Assembly (NCBI GenBank): GCA_003693705.1
Contig: RBZT01000790.1
Location: 32,033 to 96,032, forward strand
Origin: Polymyxa betae A26-41
Lineage: Eukaryota; Protista; Endomyxa: Phytomyxea
Direction: 5' to 3'
Length of the DNA stretch: 64,000 nucleotides
Under the pieces are notes generated by a model, which saw only the letters and a program-made list of their open reading frames with translations, was not told where the DNA came from and ran no database searches. Shown piece by piece: positions 2,460 to 63,922 of the stretch (position 1 is the stretch's first letter; every line of letters begins with the position of its first letter). A program made the position numbers and the translations under genes.

Positions 2460-2974
2460 AGAAGCGACTAAACATTGAATGGCACGCGACCATCAGGACA
2501 ATGTTGTGTGTATGAGAGCAAAAATTACCGAATGCTTCGTGAGGCCAGTGTTGGCTCATTCCCATTAAACTCGCTTCACTTCTGATGTCCCCTATAGTCC
2601 ATGGGATTTACTTTGCGAATAAATCTGACTGTTTTTTTCCACCTTGATAACGTCAATCGGGTCTGGTCCTGACCGAAAACCTGAACAGAGCGGTATTCTG
2701 GCTCATGGCCAGGCAGGATGTTGACCTGCCGCGCTGCCTTCGCTTTCCATCTCGTGCCTTCGAATTTGTTCCGCTTCTGGCTGCAGCGAACCGAAGGTCC
2801 GCGCAGTCTACTTGCTGTTGCTGTTGGCTGGGATGAGCCTTACATGGGTGGGCTGCTGGTCGCCCCAGCTCATGAGAATCTCGGCGCGGCCCCATCTCAA
2901 GTCGTCTCTATGACGAAGCTTCAACTTCGAGCTCATTGCAGTTTCGGTCGACTGAATTGTGGCAGCGCTCGACC

Positions 2975-5393
2975 ATGCAGGACGCCGGCGCTAGTCAGGC
3001 TCTGCTGCCAGCTCCGGTTACTAATGTGGCTCACGCGGAACTGGGACCAGACCTTGACACATTCGATTGCTTCGAGTCGAACTCACTCGTGCGTCGGCTA
3101 GAGATTCGTAGCCGAACGAACTCGTTTTTCAGGAACCATGCATTGATTCGGTGGTTTCTGATCATGGTCGTGGCGATTTTCACAGCTTTAACCGCTCTTC
3201 TGGTTTGGGTTTTGTCTCGAGCGATTTCAGGCGAAAAGTACCGAATTGTCAGAGGTCTGATTGCTTCTGGAACTGTTGCAGAAACCATCTTGGTCCATTG
3301 CAGCTTATCTTTTATGCTAGCTTCGGCTGCAGCTTTCTTATGTGCATATATCGAACCGGTCGCTGCAGGCTCCGGTATTCCTGTGATCAAATGCGTTTTG
3401 AACGGGCTTAAGCTTCCACGCGTCGTTCGACTCAAGACGCTATTTGTGAAGGCGCTGGGTGTGGCGTTTTCTGTTTCTGCTGGGCTCCCTGTAGGCATCG
3501 AAGGGCCTATGATTCATTGTGGTGCAATCTGTGGTGCTGGTGTCTCGCAGGGAAAATCGACCGTCTTCGGCATTAATACTTCGTTCACGAAATTTCCTGG
3601 TTTTCGCAACGATAAAGAGAAACGAGACTTTATCTCAGCTGGAGCGGCTTCTGGCGTCGCTTGTGCGTTCGGGGCGCCAATTGGAGGAGTGCTTTTCAGT
3701 CTTGAAGAAGGGTCTTCATTTTGGAACCAGAAACTGACGTGGCGGACGTTCTTCTGTTCGATGATGTCGTATTTCGTATTGGCGATGTTCACGTCAGCAT
3801 TGGTCGACAACAATACTTGGGGCAAGCTCAACGATTCGTCGATGTTTACTTTCGGAGACTTCACCGCGATGGGCCAGAACGAATTCACATATTCTGCCTA
3901 TGAGCTTCCTGTTTTCGTTTTGATTGGCGCTTTTGGCGGTCTCGTTGGAGCGCTTTACAACCATTGCAACATGCTGATTGCGAAATGGCGCCGTATCAAT
4001 GTCGCCTCGCCTCTTCGTAAAATAGCAGAGGCTGGTCTGACGGCCTTCGCATTTGCTGCTATGACGTTCGGCCTGTGTTTGATGAACCGGTATCATTGCA
4101 AGGGATTGGTAACAGCCCATGAGAAGATTCGAGGGCAGCTCGTCCGGTTTTATTGCCCTGCAAGCTATTTCAACCCGTTGGCATCACTTCTGCTAAACCC
4201 GTTTGATGAGTCCATCAAGCTTCTATTCCACGCCTCATTTGAGTTCGATTACTCGGAATTGTTTATTGTGTTTATGCTGATTTTAATCGCTTCATGCTGG
4301 TGCTATGGCATGTCTATCCCTTCCGGTCTCTTCGTTCCGACTTTATTGTGCGGGGCTTGTTCAGGTCGCGTTGTTGGCCAACTGCTTAATGCCTACGCGC
4401 CGATCTCCACTGTTGATGCGGGGACATACTCGTTAATTGGGGCTGCCTCTGTTCTCGGAGGGATGTCACGCATGACGATATCGCTAACTGTTATTTTGAT
4501 CGAGGTATGCTTGCTGGAAATGGCTCAATATCCTTTATGCTCATCGCGTTTCTAAGTGTACCGGTGATATCCAGTATGGTCTGCCGATTATGATAACCTT
4601 GATGACCGCCAGGTGGGTTGGTGAATGCTTCAACGAAGGTCTTTACGACATTCATATTCACCTTAACGGATGGCAATTTTTGGAGTTTGATCCTCCACCG
4701 ATTGCCCAATATTTGCTCGCCTTTGACATCATGAGCATCGAGCCGATATACTTTCGAGAAGTCGAGACTGTTGGGAGAATCGTTCAAGTACTCAGGTCTG
4801 AATGACATTCTCTTTCACCATTATTGTCTAATCAGGGTCTTAGTAATTGCCCGCATAACGGGTTTCCTGTTGTGGATAGGTCAGAGTTGCCGCAAGGAGC
4901 GTCCATGCCTGCATTCAGAGGGCTGATAAAAAGGCAGCAACTAACTGTCCTTTTGCAAGCAAGATGTTTCTGTAAAGATATTCCACAGCCGTATAAGTCT
5001 CCTCCAAGAATTCATCATATGGCGATGGAAGCATCGTATCCTAGGTATCCGGCTATTGAAGACGTATGCTTGTCTTCGGAAGATCTTGATTATTACGTTG
5101 ACCTAACACCATATATGGATCCCGCTCCATATGTTATGCAGCAGTTAGCGCCTGCTTCCACAGTATTTCGCCTCTACAGGACAATGGGATTAAGACATAT
5201 TCCCGTTGTAACTAAGACCAACCGCTTGGTTGGTATAATCACCCGCAAGGATCTCACTCATATTCGTTTCCGTCGCCAACTTAAAGAGCTTATCAGCGAC
5301 CAAGGGGCTGTTGGCGATCATGTTGACTGGATCGATGATGTTTCACAATACGAATTCGTGAGAAGTTTCCTGGAGCGAAATCAACAGCACTAG
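2975..5393 (+). CDS. CLC chloride channel / Cl-H+ antiporter (ClC-6/7-like) with C-terminal CBS domains; spliced
   Basis: Motifs GSGIP, GIEGP, FGAPIGGVLFSLEE, GLFVP, HNGFPVV, GLRHIPVV..LVGIITRKD; introns near 4506-4556 and 4796-4835; start approximate. Confidence 0.95.
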
Positions 5394-13314: not shown

Positions 13315-13784
13315 GGCGAGAAGCAATGAGATGACTTCAGATGACAACCGACGATTGAAAGAACGAAAACATGGCTGAAGGCCGCGCCCACCAAACAGAA
13401 GAATCTTGCCAAAAAAAATCCCGTCAATGGAATCTTTTTTTGGTTTTTATCAAAGTGCACAGTCACGGCATATTTTCATAGGGCTGTTTTGTTCCGCAAA
13501 CTGCCTCAAATGTTTTTGGTTCGCATAAATTGCGCAGTCAAGGCATAAAAAATCATCGCAGTAATCAACAGACTCAGTCACGGATTAAAACGATTAACAT
13601 TGCAACATGCCAGGCCATCTTGAAGCAGATCATTCCCGGAAGTTATCTACAGATAAACAGGATGTTCGATCTGCGTTTTTATAAAGCCAGAACGAAAATA
13701 AAATCTGAAATCTCGGTAATTCACTCAGAGGGGACCCCCTCGCGCGTCCAATCGGCGTCTTCGATTCGCCGTGGCTATGCGCCC

Positions 13785-15050
13785 ATGATCTTGGCAGCCT
13801 GGGCTCGCATCCGCCGACGCTCCCTCTCCAATGACGCGGCCGACGCCATCCTCCAAGCCTGGCGTCAACGGCAGACGACGCCGCCCGCGACCTGGGCCCA
13901 GCTCCTCGCCCACCTGCAAGCCTCGGCCGCTCAAGTCGATACCGTCCCTCTGGGCAGGGCCGTACACGCCCTCGCCAAGCTCGGATACGCCACACCTGAT
14001 CTACTCGACCATCTCTCCGGTCGCTCCCTCTATCTACCTCCTGTTTCGTCGTCGTTCCTCGTCGATCTGGCCGACACGTTCGGTCGCGCCGGCCGCTTCG
14101 ATCGCGACCTGTTCCGTACTGTCTCGCTACGGCTGGCCACGCCGAACGCCCTCGTCGGCCGCCTGTCGTCGTGCCGCGCCTCCACGCTCCTGCACGCGTG
14201 CGCCCGGGTCGGGTTCGCCGACCCGCACCTGTTCGCCGCCGTCAGCCGCGACGTCCTGGCCAATGTCGATATCATGCCGGTCACGTTCATGTCGCGATTG
14301 GTCTGGTCCCTGGCCCGGACCCGAATGGCCGCCTGTAGCGACCCGAGCCGCGACCTGGCCCGATCCGTACTGGCCCGGCTGCTGGCCATCGACCTGTCCG
14401 AGAATCGTTCAGGCGGGTCGTCGACCACGATCGTCACCGACATCATGTGGGCCTACGGGGTCATCGCCGACGTCATCGATCGGCGCCCGCAGGCCCGTCA
14501 ACTGGTCGCCGTACTGGCCCGGTATCTGGAGCCGCGTCTCGAGAGGACGTCGCCGCATTCGCTGGCGAGCGGTTTGTGGGCGGCGGCAACGTTGCAGACC
14601 GATCTGCCCGGCGACCTGTTGCAGGCCGCCGCCGATCACGCCACCCACCAGATCGCAACCTGCCGCTCCAATTCGTGTATCGCGATCCTGGCCTGGTCCG
14701 TGGCCAAGCTCCGGGTCCTGCACGACCCGCTGTTCGCTGCTGTCGCCGCTCTGCCGTCGCAGCGCTGGACGCAGTTCCGCCCCGGCGACCTGAACATGGC
14801 GGCATGGGCTCTAAGCCAGCAGAACGACTGCCGATACAATGACGCGTTGCTGGCGATCGCGCAGGCCGCCCTACAACAACTGGATCGATACCGGCCCGCT
14901 GAACTCTGCGCTCTTCTGTGTACTCTGTCCCAGCTACGGCATCGGACGCCTCTGTTCGACGACGCCGTCCGACGTCTGGGACGCGACCTGGACAAGCTCG
15001 ACGCGAACCAGCGCGCCATGTTACTGTCGGCGTTGCTGGACGACAGGTGA
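13785..15050 (+). CDS. Helical-repeat (OPR/FASTK-like) putative organellar RNA-binding protein
   Basis: Degenerate ~38-aa repeats with 'L...(A)WA.A.L', 'DP.LF.AV' and 'F.P..L' patterns; Arg-rich N-terminus resembling a transit peptide. Confidence 0.65.
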   Translation: MILAAWARIRRRSLSNDAADAILQAWRQRQTTPPATWAQLLAHLQASAAQVDTVPLGRAVHALAKLGYATPDLLDHLSGRSLYLPPVSSSFLVDLADTFGRAGRFDRDLFRTVSLRLATPNALVGRLSSCRASTLLHACARVGFADPHLFAAVSRDVLANVDIMPVTFMSRLVWSLARTRMAACSDPSRDLARSVLARLLAIDLSENRSGGSSTTIVTDIMWAYGVIADVIDRRPQARQLVAVLARYLEPRLERTSPHSLASGLWAAATLQTDLPGDLLQAAADHATHQIATCRSNSCIAILAWSVAKLRVLHDPLFAAVAALPSQRWTQFRPGDLNMAAWALSQQNDCRYNDALLAIAQAALQQLDRYRPAELCALLCTLSQLRHRTPLFDDAVRRLGRDLDKLDANQRAMLLSALLDDR

Positions 15051-23782: not shown

Positions 23783-26342
23783 ATGACAAATCTAGATCTC
23801 GTGAGAGAGATCATAATCAGATATCAAGACGTACTTGGTAGAGCGACCCGTCAACCTACCAATGCTGTCTGGGATCGTTCCAATCGCCGCCGCGATTCGA
23901 AAGCGGGCTCGCAGCGGAAAGCTCGAGCAATTCGAAGAGCGCATCGTGGCCCGCCTGGGCCTGCTGGCCCACATCGTCATCCGTTCCGGCAGCGATGGAC
24001 ACCCGAACGAATCAGTCGTCTCGGAAGGCGTCGCTCGTCAGGCAATCGAACGCCTGGCGCGATCTGCAGGGTTTTCGGAACATCTGAGCGATATCGTTGA
24101 TTATGGCATCATGCTCGTCTTGATCGCCATTCATATCTGTCGCCAGACCAACTTGAAAGGCGACGACGTGCTGGTTCACGCTCGTCATCTCTTAAACGAT
24201 GCTATCAACGCCACAGCGACCATCACACCGCCGCCCTCGTTCAACGATGCACAGAATCCGGAATCGCCAGCGGTTCTGATGAACGGCTCGGATCCGTCCT
24301 GGTCGTTGATTAGCAAAGCGATTGAGAAGCTTAGAGCCGAGGTTCTGGCCTCGATTCCAGCTGATGGCGTCACCGAACATAATGTCCTCTCTGTTGTCTG
24401 GCAGAACGACAACGAGGCGGATTTCAGTGCGCTTTCCTTAGAGAAGTATTTACTGACAAATATCGATAACACAGCAGAACCGGGCGAAACCGATCTAATC
24501 GAGAATAACGCGAAACGCACCCTAATGATAACAAATCAGGAATTCGAACAGCAATCCATTGAAGACGGAACCGATAACGGGAACGTCGCAGGCGAGGGCC
24601 GGTACCTAGCTCTGCAAGCACCAACCGATCAAGATGCTGAGAACGAGTCCGCTTTGATGGTACCTTGACTATATGATCCTCAGAGCTTTTGTACTGAGAG
24701 GATTGTTTAGATAGCGCCTTATGAGCCAGCTGAAGCTGCCGCAGAACACGAGTCGATGTTAAGGTCGTCGTCAGAGCAAGAATTGTTGATGTCTCGAGGG
24801 CCATCGCCGCAAGCATCGTTACCGCAGGCAACAGCATGGGAGAATAGAGACGCTGATCACGCCGACAATCAGCAGCCGATCGGAGCCAACGAAAATGATG
24901 ACGACGACAGCCGGTATTTGCACGAGATTCTGGCCGTACTGGTCCAGCTGCAAGACGGACAGAATAACATGACGAAAGAGATCCGGCTGCTGAAGGAGAC
25001 CGTTGACGGGGCTTCCGGAGCGTTTAGCCACGCCAACCGTTCCGATGAATCGTCGCCGGGCTCGCGCCGACACATCCCAAAGCCAGCGGCGCCTGCAGCG
25101 GACGATTGGCGCCGCCTGCGTAAGGCGCGCATCTCCGAAATCAATTTCGACCCGCCACCGCCTCCGAGAAGCGCCCAAACCCAAGCGAAACACGCGGCCC
25201 AATCTTCATCGATAGAGCCGATGCAGCAGTTAACCGATTCGGCGAATTCTCCCAAGCTGGACCAGCACGACGAAGTCGGCGTGCGCCAACAACGAGCTGG
25301 TGATGCCTCTGATAAGAAACCCCTGATCAAATACAAGGAGATCGAGATCGAGACGCCCGAAGACGCCTGGAGCGATGCGGACCGGAACCAGCCGTCGTAC
25401 CGTCCCAGCATCATGGTCAGTCCAGCAGAATCGACGAAGAACCGTGCGGCATCGCAAGCGAGCGACGAAGTCACCGCACCGGCAGACGCCGGATCATCAT
25501 TGGCCATGAAACGCAACACCCTGAACGAGGAGCTGCCGTCGAAGGTCGCCGTGTCGAAGGGCGACAGCGTATCGAGGAAGGCGTCCAGAACGAGCAGCGG
25601 CGATCGCTTCCGGCTGCCCGAAGAATCGGCGAGCGCAATTCTGAAGTCGGCCCGAGAGGTAATCGTGAACGCCATGTCGGACGAGCCGCTCCAGACAGAT
25701 CGTCGCCTGGTTCGCCAGAGCTCCGAATCCGAATCTGATCATATCCAGGCCAGCACGACCCGGAGACACAGCTGCCGAGCTTATTGTTCGTGCGGGCACC
25801 AGACCAGACTGCCGTCTCGCGCCTGGGCGGCGGCGTCCGAATCGGAGACGAGCGCGGGGCGGGTTCGAGTGCGTCCCGCTGCCGAGGAATCCGATGATGA
25901 CGATGCTGGCACGAGGCGGCGAAGCTCACCTCGGCGGCAAAGCTTTCGCAGACACGAGACGAGAACGGAAAGAAGACACGAAACGGGAACTGAAAAAGGG
26001 CATCGGACGCCGCAAAGTCGAATGAGAAAATCGACGAAGAGATTCGATGAAGCATCGCATTCTCATGATATGCTAACAAGTCGGTATCTGGAGCCAATGC
26101 GTGAACCAAGGTCGGCGTATTGGGAGGAGTCTCCAAGGCTGAAGAGCTATGACGTCGGATCGCATCGTCCGACCAGATTCTATGGATTCCCGGAATGCTG
26201 CCTGAACCTACAACCGGCGCCCAAATATGATCTGTATTCGGGACAGACGACGAACCCGTACCTTTGGAGGCATTCGGATTGCCGATATTGCCAAATCGAG
26301 AGATTGGGCTTGCGAATGAAGGCGTGCAGCTTTTGCCCATAA
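23783..26342 (+). CDS. Hypothetical largely disordered protein (one or two spliced genes)
   Basis: Consecutive long + strand ORFs (23835..24668, 24756..26342); no recognised motifs. Confidence 0.6.
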
Positions 26343-41379: not shown

Positions 41380-43506
41380 TTAAAACAGATCCCAGAATTC
41401 ATCGCTTTCCTCTCCAGCTTCTTCATACATGATGGTGGTCTCCAGGCGCTGCATTCCCAGCCTGCTAATACAATCCTTGGCTATAGCGCCCACAAACTCG
41501 TTCAAATCGGGACCAACATCAACCTCAGCGCCGGCCCAGATAAACAGCTTCGCCGAGCGCGATTTCGCTTTTCTCTTCACGAACACGAACACGCCGGAAT
41601 CGTTGAGATCCTCGGGGCCGAACACTTCGATCTCTTGCAGCCGAGGCCAGCTATAGAACACAGCGAACCCGGATTCTTCTCCAGCGATAACGAGCGGCCC
41701 CGAATCGACATGATCGCGTTCGGAATGGCTCGCTGCTGGAAGCACAACGGGCGGCGTCGTAGAAGTCGGCCGATGAGAGACCGACCCCGACCTCAACTCG
41801 GTCGGCGCCTTCTCCAACAGATCCGGCAGCGGCAGAACCAGAGCTTTATACTCATCATCGTAATCGGCCACGCATCCAGCGAAGACGGGCGCCTTGCGCT
41901 CGCCGAACAGCGACAGAAACTCGGGCGGTTCGAATCCGTCGTGGACGTCGATGGTGCTGTTCGGACCCCTTTCGAATCGCTGCAATCTGGGCACTAATGT
42001 CTGCCTTGCGTAAACATACAGCAGGCGTTGCGATCGTTTCCCGATCCAGACGTACATAGCGCTGGATGTATGGAAGACGTAGACGCCTCTCGTGTCTATT
42101 CTCGTGTCGAGATCGGCCAGCTTCCCGACGATACAGAGCGGATCGCGAGTCGGCGAGAACGACGTGATTCTGTAGATGATCGGGGCGTCGACCGCGCCGA
42201 ACTGCATTCGATTCTGCCAGTGAAGCAGGGCGACGGCGAACCCGACGTTCGGCGAGATGATATCGCGGCGCGATTTCACGAAATCGAACGCCTCGTTGAA
42301 GGAGATGCCGCGTTTCAGCATGAGATAGGCGATGACCATGGTCGCCGATCGCGAGATTCCACGATGGCAATGGACCAGGACCTTGTGATGCGGTTTCGAG
42401 AGCGCCGTCTCGATAAACTCGATGACGTCGTACACTCGGCACATGATGTCTTCGTGCTTGGAGTCGGTCAGACGCAGGCCCAGATAGGTGAACTTTTCAG
42501 GGAACTCGTTGCGGCAGGCGTCCAGAGCCGTATTGACGATATGAGTGATGCCACGCGAGGTCAGATGGTTCAGGTCGGTGCTGACGGCGACCCCGGACAG
42601 GAACAGGTTCGGCTCGATCAGGCTGGATTGCGGCGCGTAATGCTCCAGCTGGGCCAGCTTCTGCTGCTCTTCGCTCAAGCCGGATCGGAACAGATGCTGC
42701 TTTCTATCATCGGTAGGTATAGCTGCCAATGGTCCCTCCAACGACACCTGAAAGTTCAATAAGATTCATGGAGACTTTTACAATCTATAAAACGCTTGGA
42801 TCATCAAGATTCTGCCACAAAGTTGAAACTTAAAAAAAACTAAAATCATATTTACGGGGGTAATTCCTGCCAGATCTAATTGAAGGGTTTCCTTGCGATT
42901 GATGCCGTTGGTGTTTTGCCGTTGGGGATTGCCACAGATTGCTATATAGACAGGATGGTCGGATACATCGACATTATTGGGTGATTCGGGAAATGGCACA
43001 TAGCTGGTGGCGTTCCAAAGGCGCTCGATAATGGCCGGGCCGTTCGCGGCGCTTCCCAATGCTAAGACCAGCTCGAATCCCATCGTCTCAGCTGCACATA
43101 GATCATTATCGGACAGATTCCTGCCGGTCCAGACGAATATGCGATAATCGACGACGACGCCATTGGATAACGTCAGCGTCTGTTGAGCAACGTTCAAAGG
43201 TATGGTGGTATTGCTGCTGTTGAGGTTGGCGGCGCCGCTCGAGCACAGGCTCAATGCTGCCGCATTCAACGATGGCGGAGGCTCGGTTCGCAATCGTTTC
43301 GAATCGTAGATGCGCAGAGCGACAATGGCGTCACGATCGGTGAACGGCAGCATCTGGCGCAAGGCGACCGGACTCCCGTTCGGCAACCGCCAAGCAACCG
43401 CCAGATTGGCATGGGCCGGTGATGACGATGAAGATGTTCCGGTCGGTGTCGCAAGCAAGTCGTTTAGTGAAATCGCCTGTTCCGGTGTGGACAGGCGATG
43501 GCCCAT
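41380..43506 (-). CDS. Dual-specificity phosphatase with gelsolin-like segments (plant MKP1-like architecture)
   Basis: VLVHCHRGISRSA catalytic motif, ISPNVGF, DTRGVYV..YVWIG, terminal E..EFW..F. Confidence 0.9.
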
Positions 43507-43719: not shown

Positions 43720-46700
43720 TCATCCGAGGAGAAGGGTTCGGAGGTCGAGAGCTGACAGTTTTGGAATGGATCGGGCAGCTCCATCAGAGCTGATTAGCGA
43801 ATCGGAGAGCTTTTGTTTGCGGCGTTGCATTTCCAGGACTTTCTCTTCGATCGTTCCTTCGATTATCTTTGCGAAAGTCAGCAAATGGTAGCGGGATGAC
43901 ATCAGGTCGTTACATTACCATCCGATAGATATGAACAGGTCGTGTTTGTCCAATGCGATAAATGCGACAGAATGCCTGATCTTCGATTGAATAATTCCAC
44001 CAGGTATCCAGCATGAAACAGTGATTGGCAGCGGTGAGATTCAGACCAACACCGGCACATTTCAAGCTCAGTAAGAAGACGACGACAGTCGAGTCGTTGT
44101 TGAAATCATCGATGGACCTTTCACGATCTCCCCGATTCATGCTGCCGTCGATTCGAACTGATCGGATGCCTGCCGCATCCAGACACAATCCGACCAGGTC
44201 CAGCATAGTAGTCCATTGACTATAATAATCCACAATCAATCCACTGCAAACCCAGAGAACAGAAAAAGGAAGAAGACCTGAAGACGACGGCTTTTTCGTC
44301 TGGAGATTCACGCCGAATCTTAACCAGGTGACGAATTAGGAAGTCCATCTTAGGCGAGTTCCGAAAGCGCTCCAGATCTAGATCCAAGTTTAGTGCAAAC
44401 TACGTGTTCAGACAGATTCGATTACCGGATTCCCTGTTCTTCACAATATTGAACTGAATGCCATTCTCTGGGTTCTCGTGTTTCGTGAGATTGGATCCAG
44501 AAGGAAGCTTCTGACCGCAAACAGGGCAATTCCCGTTGCTATTTGATACCTATATTGAGAAGATCGATCCCAAATTCAAATAATTAAACGTTGAGCTCAC
44601 TGTTGCAGCACACTCAGTACAGAGAATATGACAGCTGTTATCCAAGATCGGCTGATCGGTTATGAAGTCTAAGCACGAAGCGCAGATGCAATCAGAGAAG
44701 CCATCCTGCTGTTGAGCTGAATTGCAATCAGCAAGGGAACCCTGCTCCTGCTTGACTTCATCTTTTGAATGAATTGAGAGAAGATTTAGCGCAGCGGTCA
44801 AGTCATCGTCGTCGTCGTCTTTCTGATCAGGAGATGAACTTGAATTCGACGCTCTTTTATCTCGCTCTTTAACATCATCGGCTGAATGTATTGACAGCTT
44901 ATTTAAAGCCGTTTCCAAAGCGTCGTCAGGCGAAGGTTTGCTGGACGAGTTCGTAGTGGATTCCGGATTGTTGCAAATGTCTGGCTCAGAACTGCTCGTG
45001 ATAGGACCTGTTTAGAGATTAGCATGCTGAGTCCACTTATGCTTACTGAACATACCAATCATGCAATTACACGCTTGACGCAACCGAAGTACCCTCACCA
45101 AAAGTTGCCTTTCATCGAACTGTAAACACACTTAGATGAGGAATAGATTGGATGGAAAATAGCCTACAGGCGCCTTCCGACAATCGTTGCTGATTTGATC
45201 GTATGCCTTCTGTTGCTCCTCGCGGAATTTCAAATTGTAAACCTCAATATGTCTTAAACCAATCAGAAATTGAGCAATAGAACGGAGCGGTAGACCTACC
45301 TTGGAGGCAGCTTGATAAGAGGATCGCCATGCTCGTCTTTATCTTCCTTAGTACGACGGATCATAATCCCTTGCAATATCGGCCGCAGCTTCTGGACTCC
45401 CTTTTTATTTTGCGATCCTGCAAATGATGAAAACGATTAGCAAGCGCTCCATGTACTCGATTAGAATCAGCGAATTACCGAAAAGCATTTTCCATTCGTC
45501 TTCATCGCAGAATGGAGCGAAGCGAAGAAATTTGAAAACGGAAAACATATCCTGTACATGATTCTGGAGGGGAGTCGCTGAAGGAAGGTCAGGGAACGCT
45601 TACAATTCCTGCATGGGACAAAACCTGTCATCATCCACCTATTTCATCAATCAATTCCGCTCTAGAATCAACAGATCGTATGGATACCTCGTCTGTGATT
45701 CGAGATCGAAAATGGCTTTGGCCGTCGCCGTATTGTGATTTTTGATGACATGTGCTTCCTATCAAAAGTTACAAATGGAGACTTTGAGCATAGACCTTGT
45801 TACATCAAGAATGATGCGAAACCAGTGAATGTCATGCAGTACAGCTTTCTGTTTAAATGATGACAACGCAGTCTATTTCACAACGTTAAAAATTTAAAAA
45901 GAAAACTCAAGAAAACTCATATCAACGAACTTGGTATGTTGTAATTACAACATTGAAACGGCCAGCTTCTGAGACGCTTTTCAGCTGATCCTTTCCATGA
46001 TGTATATGAACACGAAGACTATTCCGATGAGTATGTCGCTGAATCTCCTGACTCCACTAAAGACCAGTCAGCTAACATACCAGACATAGAGTGATGTCGT
46101 AATGCCTGAGTGGCGACGGCAAGCGGGCAAATGATTAGCGTAGAGTTGCATCGAATTCTGTCTTTGGAAGACGTTTTCGGTAAATCCGATTCCGATGGTA
46201 GCGATGTAAGAATCAAAGCGATCATCTGGATGGTCTTTCCCAAACCCATATCTGAAATAATGTCTCAGAGAGATTCTAAACTCAAATGCAGCTCTCACCA
46301 TCAGCAACGACGCCCCCTCGTGGACCTCCAGCTTGGTTGCCATCCCGCTCTCGTTCGTACATCCAGCTAAAGCACAGCTGCTGGTGCGGATAGAGCTTAG
46401 ACTTGAGCTTTTCGCTTACAGCAACCTGTCATGTTCATTTAAAAAAAATCACCACGTGAGAATTTCTTACATCTTTGACGTTATATTTCAGAGCCAATGA
46501 TTCTTCCAACAGACGAAGATCGAGCGATGCCTGAACCGAAAAAAAGTTATAAAAGCTTCAGCAGGAGAAAGTACATACTTTGGTACGAACGGATGGATTC
46601 GATCCTTGTTCAGCCAATCCGATTCGTTTCGTCTCATCTGCAGGTAAAAATTGAAGAGAAGACTCGAGTCTAGCATTCACAGCAAATACGGGCTTTGTCC

Positions 46701-47715
46701 GGATTGGATCTGGATGCTTCTGCATTTCATGTGAGCGACAGAAACAATAACGATCACGGAGCTACCTCTTTATAGGAAAGCGCATCTGATAGCTTCTCGA
46801 GCTTCAGCCGCATTCGCTCACCTCGGTCATTGAGAGTCGCCAGTAAAGCGATATCACTTAATGAAGCTTGCAATCTTTGAATGTCTTTTCGGATCGATTC
46901 TTCCGATTGCGATGCATACTCTATGGTCTGTCAGCTGAACGAAAAGCTACACCAGCAGCGAGATTCAACCGTTCGGAGGCGCATTAGCTGGGGTTTTCTG
47001 CTCATCAGAAACCGATTTAGGCGAACTTGCTTTTGACTGCCGTTGCCAGTCAGCACACCATCGAAAATAGCTGTAAGATAGGCTTACTCGTGGGCAATAC
47101 AGACAGAGCAGTAGACTTACTCGCACGAACGAGAAGAGCAAACGTAATATTCACGCTTGTTATTTCTCGCTGTAGAAGCTGTTTTTGTTGCGGCGAGATT
47201 GCCACATTTGCAACGAGGAGCTGAAATACTATCCCTTTGTGCTAAGCCTCCTGAAGCGAATTCTGCGATGGCGACGCTTGGCGATGCAGGTTCCTTAACT
47301 ACGATCGCCATGAACACGTCAAACCACTTAAAGAATCTGAATAGCTGGTCAATATCCATAAAAACATTTAACACTTGATAAACATACTTGCAATGCTTTG
47401 TCGTCCCGCAAGTGTAGAATTCCCGGCCAAAATTCGTTTCTGTATTGGCCGATTTCAAAACTGCCGGCTTTGAGCAGTTACACAGTGGTCGCTTTCCTGC
47501 TGGAATTGGGACCTTTTCCACCAAAGAGAAATAGCTGTTGACAGACAGAAATTAAAACATCTACAATTCAAGAATAAAAGAAGTCACCTGCAGTGACTCC
47601 CCGAGCCGTATTGGCTGCAGCCAAAGAATTCCCGACCTCCATTCAAACCGGTTTGGATTCGTCGACGAACGGCCAGCTTGCCATGGCAGAAACAGTGCAA
47701 GTCAGTGTCCGACAT
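43720..47715 (-). CDS. SNF2-family helicase copy 1 (GRF zinc fingers + SNF2_N + RING-like + helicase C; TTF2/Rad5-like)
   Basis: C.C..A...N.GREFY.C repeats, D-MGLGKT, DEAH, TPLQN, RLRQAC, SQW, GVGLNLT, QAFCRIYRIGQ, TIEE. Confidence 0.9.
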
Positions 47716-49108
47716 TGCTCATGTGCTGGCCGAAAGGCGGAGATGGATTCTCCAGGAATCACGGAGAGGCGAAGACGCCACTCTTCAAATGTCAACTGTT
47801 CTTCATTGCTATCAAATTGTATTATGATACAGTATAATTTTTCATGGTCTGACGTGGGAACGTAACGGATTAACGTTTCTCAATCTGCTCTGTTAGACTA
47901 ACAATCAAAGCGTTGGGTTCGAGATCGTGGCTATGAGGCTAGTTGATTGCGACGCCCGAATTCAGTGCAGCTGCTCGCCGATTTGAAGCAGCTCTCCAGC
48001 TTTAGATATGCAATTACTCGCGGCTGGTATTCGAAAGATTTTATCAGACTGAGGTGGCACGACACAAAAGACAGTATGCAATGAAACCACGACTCTATAA
48101 TGATATGACGCCCAGCGATCGATCTTGGCCAAAAGGAGGAAGAGAAGTTATATTACATAGCCGGGTCTGTGTATACAAGTGCTGAGACAAATGAACCAAT
48201 ATGAAAGAGGAGTGGCCAACTGGAACATGGGGAAAAAGCCTCTGGAACTAAATCCACCAGCTCAGGGGGGAGTTGATGCTGGATTCTAATCCCTTGATGT
48301 CTCCGTACTTTCGTCGAGCTTCTCTTAGGGTAAGGTGCTCACTGATAGAAGAGTCCAGCTCTTCGCCGCTGGCATTCGAGCTCTTTCGCAGACTAGAACC
48401 CATTTTATCAGATTCTCAGCTTGCAGTTTGACCAGCAACCCGGTTGGCCACGAAACTGCTAGCCTGCACTATCATGGTCTCTGCAGGTCTAAAATATTCA
48501 AAGAGGGCTGTAAGGAACTGATAGACTCAGTACAGAGTCTCCTGGACAATTCTAAGAGTTGCTCTCCTAAGTAGTCTAGAGAAGTCAAGACATTCGGTGG
48601 TAGTCGTACCCTCTCGTCAGTCTCGAGTCTTTCCGATCTGAGACATGTGAGCTACTTCTCCAGTCTACAGTGCGGGTCACTTCAGAGAAGCTCTTCCTTA
48701 GCTTCCTTCTCTAGAGTACACGATATGTCTCCGGTCTCCAGTCTCTTACTGGCCAGGTACTGAGATAATGTTGGAAGATCTGAAGCACCGTTACGAAGAT
48801 CTCAGTGACCGAGAGTGTGAAGACTACTGCATGAAGAACTCTTATCTCTTGACATAGGAAAAGTGCAGTTATTACAATAGCGATAATAATATTATTACGA
48901 CTTCAATAGGTCTGCTCCTTTAGAATTTGTAGAAGACGCTTTAGTTCGTCAATATTTGGTGACGACGACAAGCCGTCAGAGCTTATCAAAGCTTCCGCAA
49001 GTTCTTGTTTATGGTGTTGCAAATCCAAGACAATCTCTTCAATTGTTCCTTCAATGATCTCCTGTGCAGTGTGCATTTGCAGGGCTGCGCGGCTCTTACT
49101 ATGAGCTT

Positions 49109-49128
49109 GCGCTAGTATTAATGTGCGC
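49109..49128 (+). promoter_or_regulatory. Candidate rolling-circle origin (TAGTATTAA nonamer between GCGC arms)
   Basis: TAGTATTAA at 49113-49121, one base from TAGTATTAC; the stem is short. Confidence 0.4.
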
Positions 49129-49223
49129 GGGGCCTCTGCGCAACCCACAATTCGAGTGTGTGCGATTTCGGGGCTGCGCACTCCCCGGGGTGTGCAACTT
49201 TTTTGAAGCGCGCGCCATTCGAA

Positions 49224-50606
49224 ATGGTGTGTTTTATTGATGATGAAGCGAGCGAAGGCATTGATGTTGAAGAAGGTGATGCTGGCGATGTTACTGCTAC
49301 ACGTTGTCGCTCGATGGTGTTTACCTGTTTTGTTAATCAGCGTTTAACGCTCGATGGCGTGGATTTGGGTGAAGCTCCAGTTGCGGGTGTTCCGTCTGCG
49401 GAACAGGTGGTGCAAGGTCTTCAGTGCAAATATTTGCTGTACGGGCGTGAAATATGTCCTGAAACCGGCCGTTTCCATCTACAGGGTTACGTGCAGTTCC
49501 GGTCAGCGGTCACGTTCAAGTCCGTTCACAAAAAGTTGAAGCCGTATGTGTTTTGGTTACGGAAGGCGTTCGGGAATCCTGCGTCGAACCGCAAGTATTG
49601 TAAAAAGTCCGGCGATTGCTATGAAGCGGGCGTTGTTCCGGCGGACGGCTCGGCTGAAGGTGGCACCCGATGGGAGGAGGCTGTGTTGCTTGCGCGTGCT
49701 GGTCGGATTGACGAAGTTGACTCTCACACGCTTGTTTCTTCAATTCGTTCCAAAGAACGAATTGAGGAACGTGCAATGTTTCAGCGGCGGCTTCCTCAAT
49801 TACGCGAGATGCGGAACGTTTGGCTATGCGGCCCGGCTGACGTCGGCAAATCGTCCGTTATATCGCGTTTGTTCCGCTTGGAAACGGATGTGTTCGATAA
49901 GCAACGAAATAAGTGGTGGTATGTTGTCCACTGGATGTCAACTTGACTATGTTGTCCACTGGATAACATATTTATTAGGTGTAATTACCGTCATCAGCCG
50001 GTGGTGTTAATCCAGGATTTTGACCAGTTTCATGGTCAGAAGTTACTGTCGCACGTAAAAATATGGGCGGATGTGTATCCGTTCTCAAATGAGCGTAAGC
50101 AAGGCGCCGTTCGTATTCGTCCTTATCACATCATTGTGACATCCAACAAAACTATTGCGGAAGCGTTTTGTGATCACGATCCCGTTCACGTCCGCGCTAT
50201 TCAACGTCGATTTCGTGAAATTAACATGTTCGAGTGCGAGCGCACACTCGGTGGCGTTGCCCCTGGACTTCAACGACCGGATTGTCGCTGTTATGATCAT
50301 CATCCTGAGCTGTACCCAGATGAGACGCTTCGGCGTTTCATCCAGCGTACGCATGGCTGGTTCGCCTTTGATGATGATAATCTCATTAATGTTGATTATC
50401 CGGAGGATAGCTCATTCTTTCGTCCGTTTGTTGCGGTCGACCCGAACGTTTATTCCCTGGTGCCTGTTCCGCGGATGTCTCGCGTTCCTCAACCGCCCCC
50501 GGACGCTGAAGTCGAAACTGCTTGTTCTGTTAATACTGAAGGGGAGGCGGCGCTCGGTTTAGCAAGTCTCGCGGTATCGTCCCCTCCCGTGTCACCTGTC
50601 ATGTAA
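49224..50606 (+). CDS. rep: Replication-associated protein Rep (HUH endonuclease + SF3 helicase); join 49224..49918, 49979..50606; 440 aa if one intron
   Basis: Motif I VFTCF, motif II HLQG, motif III YCKK, Walker A GPADVGKS, Walker B LIQDFD, motif C IVTSN, Arg finger QRRF; splicing restores KWWCNYRHQPVVLIQDF. Confidence 0.93.
49919..49978 (+). other. 60-nt GT-AG intron in Rep, built from the 28-bp repeat
   Basis: GTATGT...TTTATTAG; contains an in-frame TGA; removal rejoins the TG|G Trp codon. Confidence 0.9.
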
Positions 50607-50867
50607 CGAATAAACGGTGCATCATGGCGCGTTTTTCGCGCGCTTTAAACTCCAATTCCCCTTAATAAAGCAGCAGCCTGCTTGCTGCATTTCGACATGG
50701 GTTCCCGTGCTGGTTCGCTGGGGTAGGATTCATTCCTATATGCTTATCGAACTGACCACATCAAATGGAGACATCGTTTCGATTAACGATTCCGGACGAG
50801 GCGAGTTCACCGTCCAGGTCTTCGACCCCTTCGACGTCCAAAGATGCCTTCCGCTCAGTACGTACAG

Positions 50868-50985
50868 GTATGTTGTCCACTGGATGTCAAGTTGACTATG
50901 TTGTCCACTGGATGTCAACTTGACGATGTTGTCCACTGGATGTCAACTTGACGATGTGGTCCACTGGATCTCATATTTATTATAG
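50868..50985 (+). repeat. 118-nt intron-like block: 3 full + 1 partial 28-bp units, same family as the Rep intron
   Basis: CAG|GTATGT...CATATTTATTATAG; unit (T/G)ATGTTGTCCACTGGATGTCAA(C/G)TTGAC. Confidence 0.9.
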
Positions 50986-53900
50986 TGGAAAGCCCTTCGT
51001 CAACTACTTCAAATAGATTGCGGATGAGGAATTTCATCTTGGGAGACTCACGAAACCAGCTAAGATCTGTTTCTAAAATGCGGACATAGTCAAAATATGA
51101 GTGCGCCCCAGTACCGATTTGGCTATTTTCACCAATGTAAAATTCGGAACGATCTTGCTCCACAAATCGTGTCGATAGATATTCTTTTTCATAAACAGCG
51201 CCATTTACGTTCTCACTTCCTGCCTAGAAAGAATTTAAAAAAAGCAAATGCATTCTGAAACCGCTAAGCTTACATTCGAGACGCAATCACCGTAAGGGAT
51301 GGAACAGTCACTATCAAACGTCGATTCCCAGGATGGCATTTGATTTTTGATCTGAACACGGAAGCGAGTACAGTAACAGAATGATTATGGAGACTAACAG
51401 ATACCTTCCAGTTGGTCACGTCTCATTTCAGGATGGATAAAGAGCCTGTTGAATATTGAATTCAAATCGGTCTTGGTTGATTTGTGTTTACTAAGTTCGA
51501 TTGTACTAAACACCGGCGAAGTGTTTTCCATGTCATGATTTAAGAATGTAAATTCCCGCTCAAGAAATACTGATGCCAGTCAGAATAACAATAAGCCCTT
51601 AGGTTTAAAATTTAACCTTCGTCCAGCATGCAATTGCAAGCTTGGCGAAGCCGAAGCATCCCCAAAAGTTTTAGTTTTTTCGCTGGGTCTTTATCCTAAA
51701 GGCAATATGAAAAACATAATGGCAGCTTTAAATGCCCAACAATCAGTGCCTGAAACAATTCATGTGCTTGAGTATAAAGTATTTCGTCCCCTTTTCGAAA
51801 TTTTAGGCGATGAATTGTAGAGTGTCTGACAAATGTTAAACATTCAAGTTGGGAACAGCAGCAGAACCTACTTAGGTGGCAGTACAACCAATGGATCACC
51901 ATTTTCATCCTTATCGAGTTTGGTACGACGAATCATGATTCCCTTCAAAACCGGATGAAGTCGTTTGATGCCTTGGCTGTCCAACATCCGGTTTTCTAAG
52001 ATTTACACAAACCGTTTTTAAGAAAATTTTGAGCGAATTCTTTTACGGTTGGGCTCACCGAAAAGCTCAACCCATTCGCGTTCGAGGCAGAAAGGAAAGT
52101 AACGAAGAAACCGAAACGCCGAATACATTTCTCGCAATTCATTCTGCAAGCGAGTCGCTAATCGATAACATAGATACACAAATCGACAAGAACAAATGAC
52201 GATATCGAGACATTACCTGACATTAACCACCTGTTACACAAAGAAATCTCAGCATCAGATTGGGACGGTCACCACCGTATAGCTACCTCGTTTGCGATTC
52301 TAGACCAAAAACGGCCTTTGCCATGGCAGTATTGTGGTTCTTGATAACGTGCGCTTCCTACCAGATCCCATAGTTAAATCTGGGTTTCGAAACAAATTAC
52401 GCTGCATACGTCAAGAACAATTCGAAACCAATGAATAGCTTTCAGCAACACTGATGATACTACTGTCTGGACCCGAAGATTAAAGCGTTGAAGCCTCGGT
52501 TACATCCCAAACCTGGTATGTCGTAATTATAACGTCAAACTCGGTTGCTTTTGAGAGGTCCTTAAGCTGACTGTGTCCATGGTGGATGTGAACTCGAAGA
52601 CTGTTTGGGAAGGTATGTCGTTGAATTTCCTGATGCCACTAAGGAAAGTCAGAATAGCCACTTAAAAAATGAAAGAGATATATTTGCCTGGTTGACGAGG
52701 GCCAGAGGACACACAACCAAAGTGGTCGCGGAACGGATTCTATCCATGTAGGATTCACCGTTTGGATTCAAAGGGAGCGGTTCAGATTGTGATTGTTTTA
52801 AATCTGACTCCGATGGCAACGAGGTGAGTGTCAAAGCGATCATTTGAACAGTTTTGCCAAGTCCCATATCTAAAACCCAAATGTTAAACCATAATCAGCA
52901 AATCCTTAAATTTGCTGCCATGCCGTCAGCAACGATCCCTCCTCTTGGATCCCCATCCTTCTTATTATCCCGTTCTCTCTCATACATCCAGCTAAAACAC
53001 AGTTGTTGATGCGGGAGGAGCTTCACTGTCAGCTTTTCGCTAACTGTGATCTACTGGTAAGTTGAGCGTAAACCAATTCAATAGGAACGAGAGCGGGCTC
53101 ACATTTTGCACGTTTGATTTCCTAGCTAGTGATTCATAGAGGACACGATAATCAAATTTCTTAACCAAAATCGCATTCAGTGGCACACAAAATCAAGCTT
53201 GGCGAATCTAGCTTACGACGTCGTCCTTAAGATCTTCGCTTGCAGCAGCAGCAACATCAAAATCACCGTTACCACCTATAGCTTCACGACTTTAAAGGTT
53301 TAGGCGGCGCTCCATCTCATATGCTTACGAACAATCGGACCAACTTTATACTTAACAATTGGACCGACGTCAAAGACATTTTCGAGAGCGAGATCAGGCG
53401 GCGATTGATCAGGATACATCTAAATTCAAGTATCAATTGGGAGGGGGCACAAATTTCAAACTAAAGGAATGGGACCCTGTTATAAGCAAGCGCATCCAAA
53501 TGCTCCTCGAGTGTTTTTTTCCAAAGTTTGCTCTCGTCACGCAGGAATATCTTGTCGGCTAACAACGCTTGCGATTCAAATATGTTTTCCTGGAAAGTCT
53601 CTTCCGATTCCACCGCATACTCTGTCTGTCGTTATACGTACTCAGATATCGGCAACGGGATTACGGTTGGGAGGCGGTTTTTGTACACGGAATTCATCCG
53701 GGTCCGAGTTCTCATTCGAATCAGTTGTAGTCACGTTAGAATCCAGGCTTTCTACAGCATCACCGAGTCGTGTATGCTCCTCGGCCCAAGGATTATTAGC
53801 AATATCAGATTCAGTTCGGGACGAGTTAGAATGCATAGTAGAACAATGCGGTTGACCGACATCTGCCCACTGATGAAACCTGATAAAATTTACTTAATGG

Positions 53901-56585
53901 GAAATGGGGTCGATAGCAAGTTTACCTGCATGAACGGGAAGCACAGACATAGAGTTCGCATTCGTTAGAGTGGCTTTCGTGAGAGATTGAAATAATAGCA
54001 GATTTCCCGCAATGGCAATGGGGTGGTGTTGAAATCTTTTGGTGTGACAAGCTTTCGATTGCGTTTGATGCTTTCGGATGGATCTCATTTGCAGCAATGG
54101 CTTTGCTGGCGACGTTGTCGGACCACTGGAAGAACCTACAAAGCTCAAAGAAAATATTGGGACCAGGCAAAGTGATTCACGTTGAGACCTGCAACGTGTT
54201 TTAGTTCCACAAACGTAATATTCTCTTCCTTTGTTCTTTTCACTTTCAGACACTTTTAATTTCGCTGGCTTTGAACAGTGACAGCAGGGTCTTTCTGACG
54301 GGATAGGGGGCTTCTTTCCTTCTGCAACAACGACATTAAGGCAACATGGTCAAACCACTGAAAAAAACTACAAGCCCAGCCTAAATATTGAAATCTGGTA
54401 AAGCGATATAACCACAGGCCCGCAACGTTTTTCAGTTCCACAAGTATAGTATTCTTTTCCTCTGTTCTTTTCGCTTTTAGCCACCTTAAATAAAGCTGGT
54501 TTTGAACAGTGGCAGGATGGTCTTCCTGACGGCACAGGGATCTTCTCTACCAGCGAAAAATACCTGTAAGGATGATTAGAGGCATCATGAAGCTGCTCAT
54601 ATTTCGTGTCGTACGTGCAGTGAGGTTCTCCCGACCCCCAGTTTCTACAGCCGAAGAACTCCCGACCCTCAAGCAATCCCGGTTGCTGAACCACTCTGCG
54701 AGCTGGTGGCCTCCGGTCAGGGCAAAAACAGTGTAGGTCGCCAGCTGCAATAGACTGGATAACGGCAGCAGCTCGCCTGAATCCAGCACGTAGCAGACTC
54801 ATAACATTACGGAACGGCGAATCTGAAGCGACTCATGAAGGTTCCCTCATCATCGACATTATGATACATTATCATGTCCATTATGCATACAGTATTACCT
54901 CTTTCATCAATTTTTTTGTTGGCAAACGAGAGCCAAAAATAGGAAATACCAAGTGAATGGAACTCTTCCTAAAAATCATTGGTGCCAGATACTGCTATCG
55001 AAAGGGGGCGGCGATTCTGGGCACGTTTGATTAGAAGGAAACGGGGGCGAAGAGTGCTGTTAGAATGTAATCGAAATGGATGAATAAGGGCGATGAAGTT
55101 TATACCAATAGCGAGAGAATGAACAGGTGCGGCTCTTATATCACCATCGGAAATGTTGTTCCAATGCCACTCCATCAGAGCTAATCAGAGACGTAGCCTG
55201 ACTTTGCTTATGATATTGTACTTCTAGAACCTCTTCTGCAATGGTCTCTGATGATCTGTAGCACGCCGCTTCGCTGATACGATGTTAATGGTGGACTATT
55301 GGTTTCTCGAGCATTGCCTTCAAAGCAAGTGGCCTCTGACGCGGCACTTTCAATTGTGATGAACGTTCTATATTACTGTCATTAGATATTAGAGTTTCAA
55401 ACCATCAATTAGACAAGGATCTTGTTTACTTATTGCAGATATCGTTTTGGGAGCATTGGCAATCACACTTCCTACAATAGCTGTTAGCTTCCATTCGTTT
55501 GGGTCACTGAGAGAAATGGCAAGGTGGTCGTCCCCATCCAGCAGGACGGAAGTGTCCAATGGCGTCACGGAGCAGGGATTGCACCGACGACATCACCCTC
55601 GAGACCGTCTTTGATACTATGAGGTCGTAACGGCAATAATTAACAGACGACCCGACAAATGTATTATCACGATACAATGACATGAGATCTGCTGACAAAA
55701 CATCCTATGTTAGGGTTTACCACAAACGGAGTTTTGTGTCGACAGGACCGGTAACGAAAAAGGCAGTCGCGCATCCCTTCAGCAGTGTCTGCAGAAACAC
55801 GCATTTTAACAGGATTGCTCGGATCACGCACTGCCTGCAATGAATGTTCTTTTTGTGGTCACCTGTCAGAATCAATTTCGGGCAAAGCCAGCAGAGCTCG
55901 TTGCAGATGCCACGAAACGACGAATGAATCGTTGCCGAATGACGAGAGCTTATCGCAGCGTTCATATCAGGGACGAACAACCGATGGAGAAAGGTTAAAT
56001 GCGATCAACGTGACGCCGAAAGCAGCGGCATGAGCAAGCAGAAACGGCTGATTGGACAGGATAATCCTGGAGCCGTTTTTGTGAGCAGCACACGTGATTA
56101 TACTATGGCGTCACCTATCATTGTATTCGACTTGGACGACGTCAGCAGTGAGAGCAAAATTCGCACGCACAGTATGGTAACAATCTTTATTCAAGGTCAT
56201 AAAGATGACTCCCCTCCTGTGGGCAGATGTCGCCTGCTGATTACAAACAGCGCAATTATCAGACTTTATCGGCATAATCGGCTATGTTAACGACAAGCTC
56301 GGAGGCAGTTCAAACAATCTGGAAGGATCGCCAATAACCAAGCAGTTTCGCTCACCCATGACAGTCCGCAATGCATGAAAGCAAATTCCCACATCATACT
56401 TGCGCGACTGTGACAGAGTCTTAAAAAAATGATTTCGCATTTCTATATTCCCTTTTCTCCGATCCCAGGACTTATCAGCTTTTTAGTAACGTGTTGGAAA
56501 GATGCGACAGTCTAATCCCACCTGGGGTTAGGGTTTAGGGTTTGACATTTGGCGACATTGCTCTCCTGCCAGTCTCCCATTCATA

Positions 56586-63711: not shown

Positions 63712-63876
63712 ATAAGAGTTGCGATACCATCACTATCAGGTGGCCGCGCCTACAACTTTTTACAAAAAATGTTAAATGGTTTTCATTTTATTTTGGAGGC
63801 AGAGGAATGATGGGGCTGCCCTCAAAACAGTGTTGTATAAAAACCTCCGCTACGCAGATTGCCAACGTTTAAACTA

Positions 63877-63922
63877 GGTTTAAATGTTTAAACATGTTTA
63901 TATAGGTTTAAACATTTAAACC
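63877..63922. repeat. Perfect 17-bp inverted repeat with 12-nt spacer (GTTTAAAC-rich)
   Basis: GGTTTAAATGTTTAAAC (63877-63893) / GTTTAAACATTTAAACC (63906-63922). Confidence 0.85.

What the first reader, a model, noticed from the sequence alone, without database searches (positions are those of the whole stretch)
49062..51010. Apparently intact CRESS-type Rep element integrated in a protist chromosome
Seen: all three rolling-circle motifs (VFTCF, HLQG, YCKK) and the SF3 helicase motifs (GPADVGKS, LIQDFD, IVTSN, QRRF) occur in order, with no frameshift or stop after one splice and an AATAAA right after the stop (50609). Host SNF2 exons flank it on both sides. Known: HUH+SF3 is the Cressdnaviricota Rep architecture; Helitrons use an SF1/Pif1 helicase and Replitrons lack a helicase. 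Inference: either a recent endogenous ssDNA virus that could assign a host to an orphan CRESS lineage, or a capsid-less rolling-circle transposon/plasmid that retains the SF3 helicase. No capsid is recognisable.
Basis: partly seen in the sequence, partly recalled or inferred. Interest (0 to 1): 0.92.

Follow-up and report, generated by a model that had tools for sequence, protein, structure and literature searches.

The report
Viral replication gene inside protist chromosome
A 1.9-kb piece of a small circular-DNA-virus-like genome, carrying a full-length replication gene from a rare unnamed lineage, sits inside a damaged duplicate gene of a plasmodiophorid (a root-parasitic protist); this gives that virus lineage a likely host, but the piece is a truncated fragment, not a complete element.

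Summary
All HUH and SF3 motifs are present in order on the + strand, and the protein is a genuine CRESS-type Rep. A profile of it and its relatives matches a solved circovirus Rep end to end (E 6.6e-55).

The element is not intact. It spans about 49061-50985 and is single-copy in the window. It has no capsid gene, no canonical origin hairpin and no terminal repeats. Its second gene, a small ORF shared with one metagenomic relative, is cut off at the element's right end.

Rep is interrupted once by a 60-nt GT..AG unit holding one in-frame stop. Relatives lack this unit. It is a short copy of the 118-nt, 28-nt-repeat intron of the second gene.

The host is a plasmodiophorid: a neighbouring chloride-channel gene is 72% identical to that of Spongospora. 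The element lies antisense in one of two tandem SNF2/GRF paralogues and replaces about 0.43 kb that encodes Helicase_C in the other copy.

The Rep clade is rare (three near-full-length proteins and four fragments found) and has its own C-terminal extension.

Best reading: a fairly recent endogenous fragment of an undescribed CRESS-like replicon. The transposon reading has no support. Read-level proof of the junctions is missing.

The parts
49061..50985 (+). Whole virus-derived insert (about 1.92 kb). The left bound is uncertain within 49061-49069; the right bound is 50983-50986.
   Evidence: Similarity of host gene B to its paralogue A stops at 49060 and resumes at about 50986. A 22-nt repeat internal to the element starts at 49069. 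No second copy exists in the window.
49061..49223 (+). Leader upstream of Rep. It is rich in short direct repeats (a 22-nt pair at 49069 and 49158; three hexamers each seen 3 times) and has weak hairpins, one with a near-match to NANTATTAC in its loop (49113-49121).
   Evidence: 2 of 2000 shuffles reach the repeat count. The folds are no better than shuffles. The motif hit is at chance level.
49224..50606 (+). Rep gene, given as one part. It is full length relative to its relatives and is interrupted once by a 60-nt GT..AG unit with one in-frame stop. It has no frameshift.
49302..49631 (+). HUH (HUQ-type, single-Tyr) endonuclease domain of Rep, with motifs I-III.
   Evidence: Pfam Viral_Rep. 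AlphaFold model pLDDT is above 90 over this stretch. PDB nuclease-domain hits.
49647..49784 (+). Helical linker, the putative oligomerisation domain.
   Evidence: Helices 142-187 in the model. It aligns with the corresponding part of 7lar.
49800..50225 (+). SF3 helicase domain (Walker A, Walker B, motif C, Arg finger).
   Evidence: Pfam RNA_helicase is only weak on the second piece alone.
50229..50603 (+). Clade-specific C-terminal extension of Rep. It has 11 columns invariant among four proteins, three of them Cys.
   Evidence: Among 134 fetched CRESS-like loci it is found only in L081. No Pfam family matches. The structure model was poor.
50609..50614 (+). AATAAA hexamer 3 nt after the Rep stop.
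   Evidence: Its function is not tested.
50740..50985 (+). Second element gene (ORF2), truncated. It keeps a 128-nt first exon and the following 118-nt intron; everything downstream is absent.
   Evidence: 43% identity over 42 aa to the ORF downstream of Rep in L081. Exon length (128 nt) and intron phase (2) are the same in both. Host exon follows directly.
50870..50973 (+). Tandem array of 3.7 copies of a 28-nt unit, each holding two short palindromes, inside the ORF2 intron. A shorter copy of the whole GT..AG unit lies inside the Rep gene.
   Evidence: (6 matches against 0 expected). The fold has z = -3.4. There is no match in IMG/VR.
48906..49060 (-). Last coding exon of host SNF2/GRF gene B, preceded by a usable AG.
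   Evidence: 72.7% DNA identity to the last exon of gene A. Translation.
50986..51223 (-). Host gene B exon encoding the segment just before Helicase_C. It is cut within the coding sequence at the element's right end.
43913..44335 (-). Helicase_C exon of the intact tandem paralogue, gene A. This is the part that gene B lacks.
   Evidence: Pfam Helicase_C 7.7e-18. No second copy exists in the window.

Best explanation
The insert is an endogenous viral element. It is a 1.92-kb sub-genomic fragment of a CRESS-DNA-virus-like replicon from a rare, undescribed Rep clade, fixed or segregating in the nuclear genome of a plasmodiophorid.

Shown: the fragment lies antisense in the 3' part of one of two tandem SNF2/GRF paralogues. 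It takes the place of about 0.43 kb that encodes Helicase_C in the other copy. It carries a repeat-rich leader, a full-length Rep gene (HUQ-type single-Tyr nuclease, helical linker, SF3 helicase, clade-specific C-terminal extension), and the first exon plus intron of a second conserved small gene.

Inferred: capture happened by illegitimate end-joining at a chromosome break, with loss of host DNA and of the rest of the replicon. The redundant paralogue made the damage tolerable. With no capsid gene, no recognisable origin and a truncated second gene, the fragment cannot act as a virus on its own.

Inferred: the 60-nt GT..AG unit inside Rep is a copy of the neighbouring intron. It has host-like length and signals. 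If it is spliced, the locus encodes a whole Rep, and the unspliced message encodes a nuclease-only form.

Inferred: the open frame implies either a recent insertion or selection on Rep.
For: Rep identity.

Host context on one contig: SNF2-related, GRF and Helicase_C domains. Paralogue alignment ends at 49060 and 50986. No Helicase_C is left for gene B. The chloride-channel gene at 2936-5387 is 72% identical to Spongospora subterranea and 64% to Plasmodiophora brassicae.

Fragment status: ORF2 is shared with L081, with the same exon length and intron phase. L081 has downstream coding sequence that the window lacks. No capsid family was found. There is no exact NANTATTAC and no hairpin better than shuffles.

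Not a transposon: single copy, no terminal repeats.

Intron-like nature of the unit: GT..AG and 60 nt. Host introns here are about 45-70 nt, and P. brassicae introns average 60 bp (PMC4471660). The coding pieces abut gaplessly on relatives. The unit is a shortened copy of the ORF2 intron.
Against: No reads were available, so neither junction is verified.

Viral ancestry rests on the Rep alone.

A 440-codon frame with no frameshift is unusual for an old, unselected insert.

The right end coincides, within 3 nt, with the end of the ORF2 intron. Simple end-joining does not explain this.

Composition differs only mildly from the host (GC3 0.47-0.50, CpG o/e 1.32 against 0.98).
Confidence: 0.68

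Rival explanations
1. Domesticated Rep. The insertion is old, and the Rep gene (with or without the ORF2 remnant) is kept by selection as a host gene. It gained a host-type intron after integration.
For: The frame is full length and open, with every catalytic motif kept. The 60-nt unit is absent from all relatives and has host-like length and signals (PMC4471660). GC3 is within the host range.
Against: The intron's source lies within the element itself, so the gain could equally have occurred in the free replicon. There is no orthologous locus or expression data. The gene sits antisense in a wrecked gene without an evident promoter. The ORF2 remnant and leader repeats are still recognisable.
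Confidence: 0.12
2. Assembly chimera or contaminant. Reads of a free virus-like circle were joined into a host contig.
For: Published plasmodiophorid draft genomes come from short reads of infected roots and metagenome binning (PMC6328671). The insert carries internal repeats that can confuse assemblers. CpG o/e differs from the flanks.
Against: Two false joins would be needed, and they would also have to remove 0.43 kb of host sequence between them. No shared stretch of assembler-word length is visible at either junction. Both sides of the Rep-internal unit are colinear, so it is not a repeat-induced misjoin.
Confidence: 0.1
3. Capsid-less mobile or episomal Rep element. A Rep-ORF2 module multiplies in the nucleus by rolling circle and reinserts.
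For: No capsid was seen in the window or in the 1.67-kb relative L081. The clade is absent from IMG/VR. Both ends of the repeat unit behave as breakpoints.
Against: There is one copy in 64 kb. No terminal direct or inverted repeats and no target duplication are present. The copy is truncated relative to L081. Host DNA is deleted at the site. Known eukaryotic Rep transposons have other architectures: Replitrons have no helicase, and Helitrons have a two-Tyr Rep with an SF1 helicase (PMC10288648).
Confidence: 0.08

Closest known systems
Rep proteins of Cressdnaviricota (best solved match: circovirus Rep, PDB 7lar; best predicted-structure matches: unclassified 'Cressdnaviricota sp.' Reps)
   Same: Single-Tyr HUH nuclease with the HUQ variant of motif II, a helical linker, and an SF3 helicase with Walker A, Walker B, motif C and Arg finger, all in the same order and spacing. 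HUQ is typical of Arfiviricetes (PMC10288648).
   Different: Identity to any named viral Rep is at most 32%. It has an extra C-terminal extension of about 125 aa with conserved cysteines, shared only with its own small clade. The gene is chromosomal and interrupted by a GT..AG unit. No capsid gene and no canonical nonanucleotide hairpin lie next to it.
Rep-derived endogenous viral elements of protists, as used for host assignment of CRESS lineages (PMC9615429 and the works it cites)
   Same: A Rep-like sequence embedded among host genes links a virus lineage to a protist host.
   Different: The host group is Phytomyxea. The paper library returned no text naming both Cressdnaviricota and a phytomyxid. 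The Rep frame is full length. A second element gene and an intron copy are present.
Replitrons (PMC10288648)
   Same: Eukaryotic chromosomal elements with a single-Tyr, often HUQ, Rep and an adjacent helical domain.
   Different: Replitrons lack a helicase, have short direct repeats at or near their ends, and are multi-copy. Here an SF3 helicase is present, there are no terminal repeats, and there is one copy.
Helitrons
   Same: Rolling-circle Rep fused to a helicase in a eukaryotic chromosome.
   Different: Helitrons have a two-Tyr Rep and an SF1B helicase (PMC10288648). Here the Rep has one Tyr and an SF3 helicase.
Introners, and intron gain by copying of an existing intron (PMC12166617 for introners inside integrated viruses)
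   Same: Two closely similar GT..AG units lie at two sites, one of them new relative to relatives, and they sit inside virus-derived DNA.
   Different: There are only two copies, both within one 1.9-kb element. No terminal inverted repeats or target duplications were seen. The reported cases concern dsDNA viruses of dinoflagellates.

Membership tests
Cressdnaviricota-type Rep (protein family) | HUH endonuclease motifs I, II and III with one catalytic Tyr | tested here: met
   Motifs seen. Pfam Viral_Rep is above its cut-off. PDB nuclease domains match.
Cressdnaviricota-type Rep (protein family) | Fused SF3 helicase (Walker A, Walker B, motif C, Arg finger) | tested here: met
   The profile matches 7lar through residue 291.
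CRESS-DNA virus (complete genome) | Capsid gene | tested here: not met
   No capsid family was found in 10 further ORFs of the insert. Nothing was recognisable in L081.
CRESS-DNA virus (complete genome) | Origin hairpin with a conserved nonanucleotide (NANTATTAC; PMC8248882) and nearby iterons | tested here: inconclusive
   There is no exact match in the insert. A one-mismatch site sits in a weak 12-nt loop in the leader, at chance frequency. Short direct repeats are enriched in the leader.
CRESS-DNA virus (complete genome) | Circular single-stranded genome | not testable with these tools
   Only an assembled linear window was available.
Endogenous viral element | Virus-derived sequence contiguous with host genes on both sides | tested here: met
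Endogenous viral element | Junctions supported by reads, or presence at the same locus in other individuals | not testable with these tools
   No read data were available.
Replitron | Rep transposase without a helicase | tested here: not met
   An SF3 helicase is present. Definition from PMC10288648.
Replitron | Short direct repeats at or near both ends; multiple copies | tested here: not met
   No repeat family links the two ends. There is one copy in the window.
Helitron | Two-Tyr Rep fused to an SF1B helicase | tested here: not met
   The Rep has one Tyr (YCKK) and SF3 motifs.
Introner | Many near-identical intron-generating copies in unrelated genes | tested here: inconclusive
   Six motif hits fall in two units, both inside the insert, with none elsewhere in 64 kb. 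IMG/VR has none. The host genome was not searchable.
Introner | Transposon hallmarks (terminal inverted repeats, target-site duplication) | tested here: not met
   None was seen at either copy.

The most novel reading that the evidence does not exclude
The Rep-ORF2 module is not a dead viral fossil. It would be a capsid-less nuclear replicon or mobile element of Phytomyxea that is expressed and has propagated its own spliceosomal intron into a new site. That would be a natural, datable case of intron gain by copying of a neighbouring intron inside a virus-derived gene.
Probability: 0.1. Interest if true: 0.85.

Novelty: new member of a known kind. Interest (0 to 1): 0.55.

Why it matters
Most CRESS-DNA virus lineages known from metagenomes have no host. 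An insert among plasmodiophorid genes gives one small, unnamed Rep clade a candidate host group. Phytomyxea are root parasites that matter in agriculture and that carry plant viruses, and the paper library I searched records no ssDNA virus for them.

The locus also shows two things worth a specialist's look. The first is a clade-specific Rep C-terminal extension together with a conserved, intron-bearing partner gene. The second is a pair of sister GT..AG units, one at an ancestral intron position and one at a new position. If the new one is spliced, it is a clean example of how a new intron can arise.

If the junctions fail read-level checks, the value shrinks to a partial genome of a new CRESS clade.

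Tried and rejected
- Host = Blastocystis. Rejected: the poly(A)-site motif TGTTTGTT reported for that genus (PMC4159000) occurs once against 2.4 expected, and the chloride channel points to plasmodiophorids.
- Canonical origin. NANTATTAC has no exact hit in the insert. The candidate hairpins in the leader fold no better than shuffles.
- Other copies in the window. None for Rep, ORF2 or the 28-nt unit.
- The 25-nt repeat core in IMG/VR. 0 hits.
- Close relatives in IMG/VR. None: 168 hits match only the common helicase part, and P0016 was not found.
- Alignment A4 was too gappy for a locus search.
- Exact look-up of six window proteins. None is in the collection.
The single metagenome scan found only L081 as a close relative.
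- The structure model of the second Rep piece was too poor (pLDDT 43.5) to search with.
- Rfam, tRNA and bacterial promoter/terminator scans gave nothing relevant.
- L081 downstream region. No long open frame on either strand.
All searches used the pieces apart, by reference.
Full report
OBSERVATION. The first piece reaches Pfam Viral_Rep above its cut-off (8.9e-8). An exhaustive HMMER search finds 4126 proteins at E<=0.001. A 40-sequence profile matches the solved circovirus Rep 7lar at 6.6e-55 across the nuclease, oligomerisation and SF3 parts. An AlphaFold model of the first piece (pLDDT 84) finds at least 500 Rep structures in BFVD. The best are unclassified Cressdnaviricota Reps with at most 32% identity.

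The joined 440-residue model was left out.

REP GENE STATE. The gene has one interruption: a 60-nt unit bounded by GT and AG that holds one in-frame stop. It has no frameshift and no other stop. The two pieces abut on 7lar (residue 202, then 207). They abut without gap or overlap on five relatives. The relatives are uninterrupted there, at the DNA level in L081. So the unit is specific to this lineage. By the rules given to me it may be an intron or a nested insertion, and I treat both as open.

THE ELEMENT IS A FRAGMENT. Downstream of Rep, after an AATAAA hexamer (50609-50614), an ATG at 50740 opens a 128-nt exon followed by GT.
- The only close relative I could fetch is L081, a 1672-bp JGI metagenome contig. 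It is 52% identical over Rep residues 2-168 of the second piece.
- L081 has a homologous ORF at the same place (18 of 42 residues identical). This ORF is unique among the 134 fetched loci. It has the same 128-nt exon and the same intron phase.
- L081 continues into a second exon. In the window, the 118-nt intron is followed at once by host coding sequence.
- No capsid family is found in any other ORF.
- The generic nonanucleotide NANTATTAC (PMC8248882) has no exact match. Its one-mismatch site in the leader is at chance level, and the candidate hairpins are no better than shuffles.
- The 163-nt leader is, however, enriched in short direct repeats.
- There is one copy in the window and there are no terminal repeats.

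THE TWO GT..AG UNITS. The ORF2 intron holds 3.7 tandem copies of a 28-nt unit with two small palindromes. The unit inside Rep is the same thing with two repeats fewer. The two share both edges, with 58 identical columns.

Host introns seen here are short GT..AG intervals. One of 52 nt lies in the chloride-channel gene, and several of about 45-70 nt lie in the SNF2 gene. P. brassicae introns average 60 bp (PMC4471660).

The simplest reading is that an ancestral intron, shared in position with L081, was copied into Rep. Whether the copy arose by reverse-splicing-type transposition, by a tiny transposon or by template switching is unknown. The element's right end also falls within 3 nt of the long copy's 3' end. 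That coincidence is unexplained (note 3).

HOST AND INSERTION SITE. The minus strand carries two tandem paralogues with GRF zinc ribbons and an SNF2-related domain.
- Gene A (about 47720 to 43800) has a Helicase_C exon (7.7e-18).
- Gene B (about 54900 to 48906) aligns to A up to 50986 and again from 49060. It has no Helicase_C anywhere in the window.
- The insert, antisense, therefore replaces about 0.43 kb: the end of one exon, an intron, the Helicase_C exon and most of the last intron.
- By inspection, a minus-strand GT nine codons upstream of the junction and the retained AG before the last exon are in the same phase. A transcript could skip the insert, but it would lack the second helicase lobe (inference).
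- A chloride-channel gene at 2936-5387 is 72% identical to that of Spongospora subterranea and 64% to that of Plasmodiophora brassicae. The host is therefore a plasmodiophorid other than these two. Polymyxa is an obvious but untested candidate (GC 45.1% in PMC6328671; window GC 48.9%).

THE REP CLADE. Only P0003, P0004 (with L081) and P0005, plus the fragments P0016, P0060, P0035 and P0077, are 44-56% identical to the first piece in the A5 alignment. All other hits are at or below 42%.
- They come from Logan, JGI and ENA contigs of 0.6-5.4 kb. None is in IMG/VR.
- They share a C-terminal extension with 11 invariant columns, three of them Cys. It matches no Pfam family.
- The HUQ form of motif II is typical of Arfiviricetes (PMC10288648).

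MECHANISM. Shown: the architecture, the context, the truncation and the kinship of the two units. Inferred: capture of a replicon fragment by end-joining at a break in a redundant gene; possible expression of a whole Rep if the unit is spliced, and of a nuclease-only form if it is not; and either recency or selection, given the open frame.

Composition is not decisive (GC3 0.47-0.50, within the host range; CpG o/e 1.32 against 0.98).

COMPARISON AND NOVELTY. Rep-derived endogenous elements in protists are known and are used for host assignment (PMC9615429). Replitrons and Helitrons fail on defining features (PMC10288648). I found no paper in the library linking Cressdnaviricota with Phytomyxea. 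The finding is a new member of a known kind, with an unusual intron copy.

SLIPS, STATED AS REQUIRED.
1. I also recalled the Blastocystis poly(A) motif before reading it in a paper. Only the motifs printed in PMC8248882 and PMC4159000 were used in tools.
2. They were written before I learned that relatives lack the unit. This report does not repeat them.

Noticed in passing
window 43800-47720 (-) and 48906-54900 (-): Two tandem paralogues encode GRF zinc ribbons plus an SNF2-related domain. Only the first keeps Helicase_C. The second may already have been decaying when the insert arrived.
   Followed up: partly
P0016, P0060, P0004 (relatives): P0016 runs into unrelated residues right after motif II, and P0004 starts just downstream of that point. 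This would be expected if these relatives have an intron or break at another position of Rep than the window does.
   Followed up: no
L081:913-1007: The ORF2 intron of the relative is unrelated in sequence to the window's. It is also built of repeats: 16-nt inverted arms that are 94% complementary, and three 18-nt direct copies.
   Followed up: partly
P0003 residues 1-60: The longest relative has a Lys/Arg-rich N-terminal extension that looks like a nuclear localisation signal. The window's Rep lacks it.
   Followed up: no
window 52650-52930 (-): By eye, two of the short intervals between conserved SNF2 coding blocks of gene B begin with GC rather than GT.
   Followed up: no
window 858-2459 (-), 13530-15050 (+), 24756-26342 (+): Long ORFs with high GC3 (0.65-0.76) and no or weak Pfam matches. 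One has a faint FAST-kinase-like hit and one looks largely disordered.
   Followed up: partly
window 730-834 and 63867-63921: Two other tandem arrays (35 nt x 3.0 copies; 28 nt x 1.9 copies), unrelated to the element's 28-nt unit.
   Followed up: no
window 49175-49196 (+): A G+C-rich 9-pair inverted repeat followed by a T run lies about 30 nt before the Rep start codon.
   Followed up: no
window 41383-42759 (-): A dual-specificity phosphatase fused to gelsolin repeats, an MKP1-like architecture.
   Followed up: no
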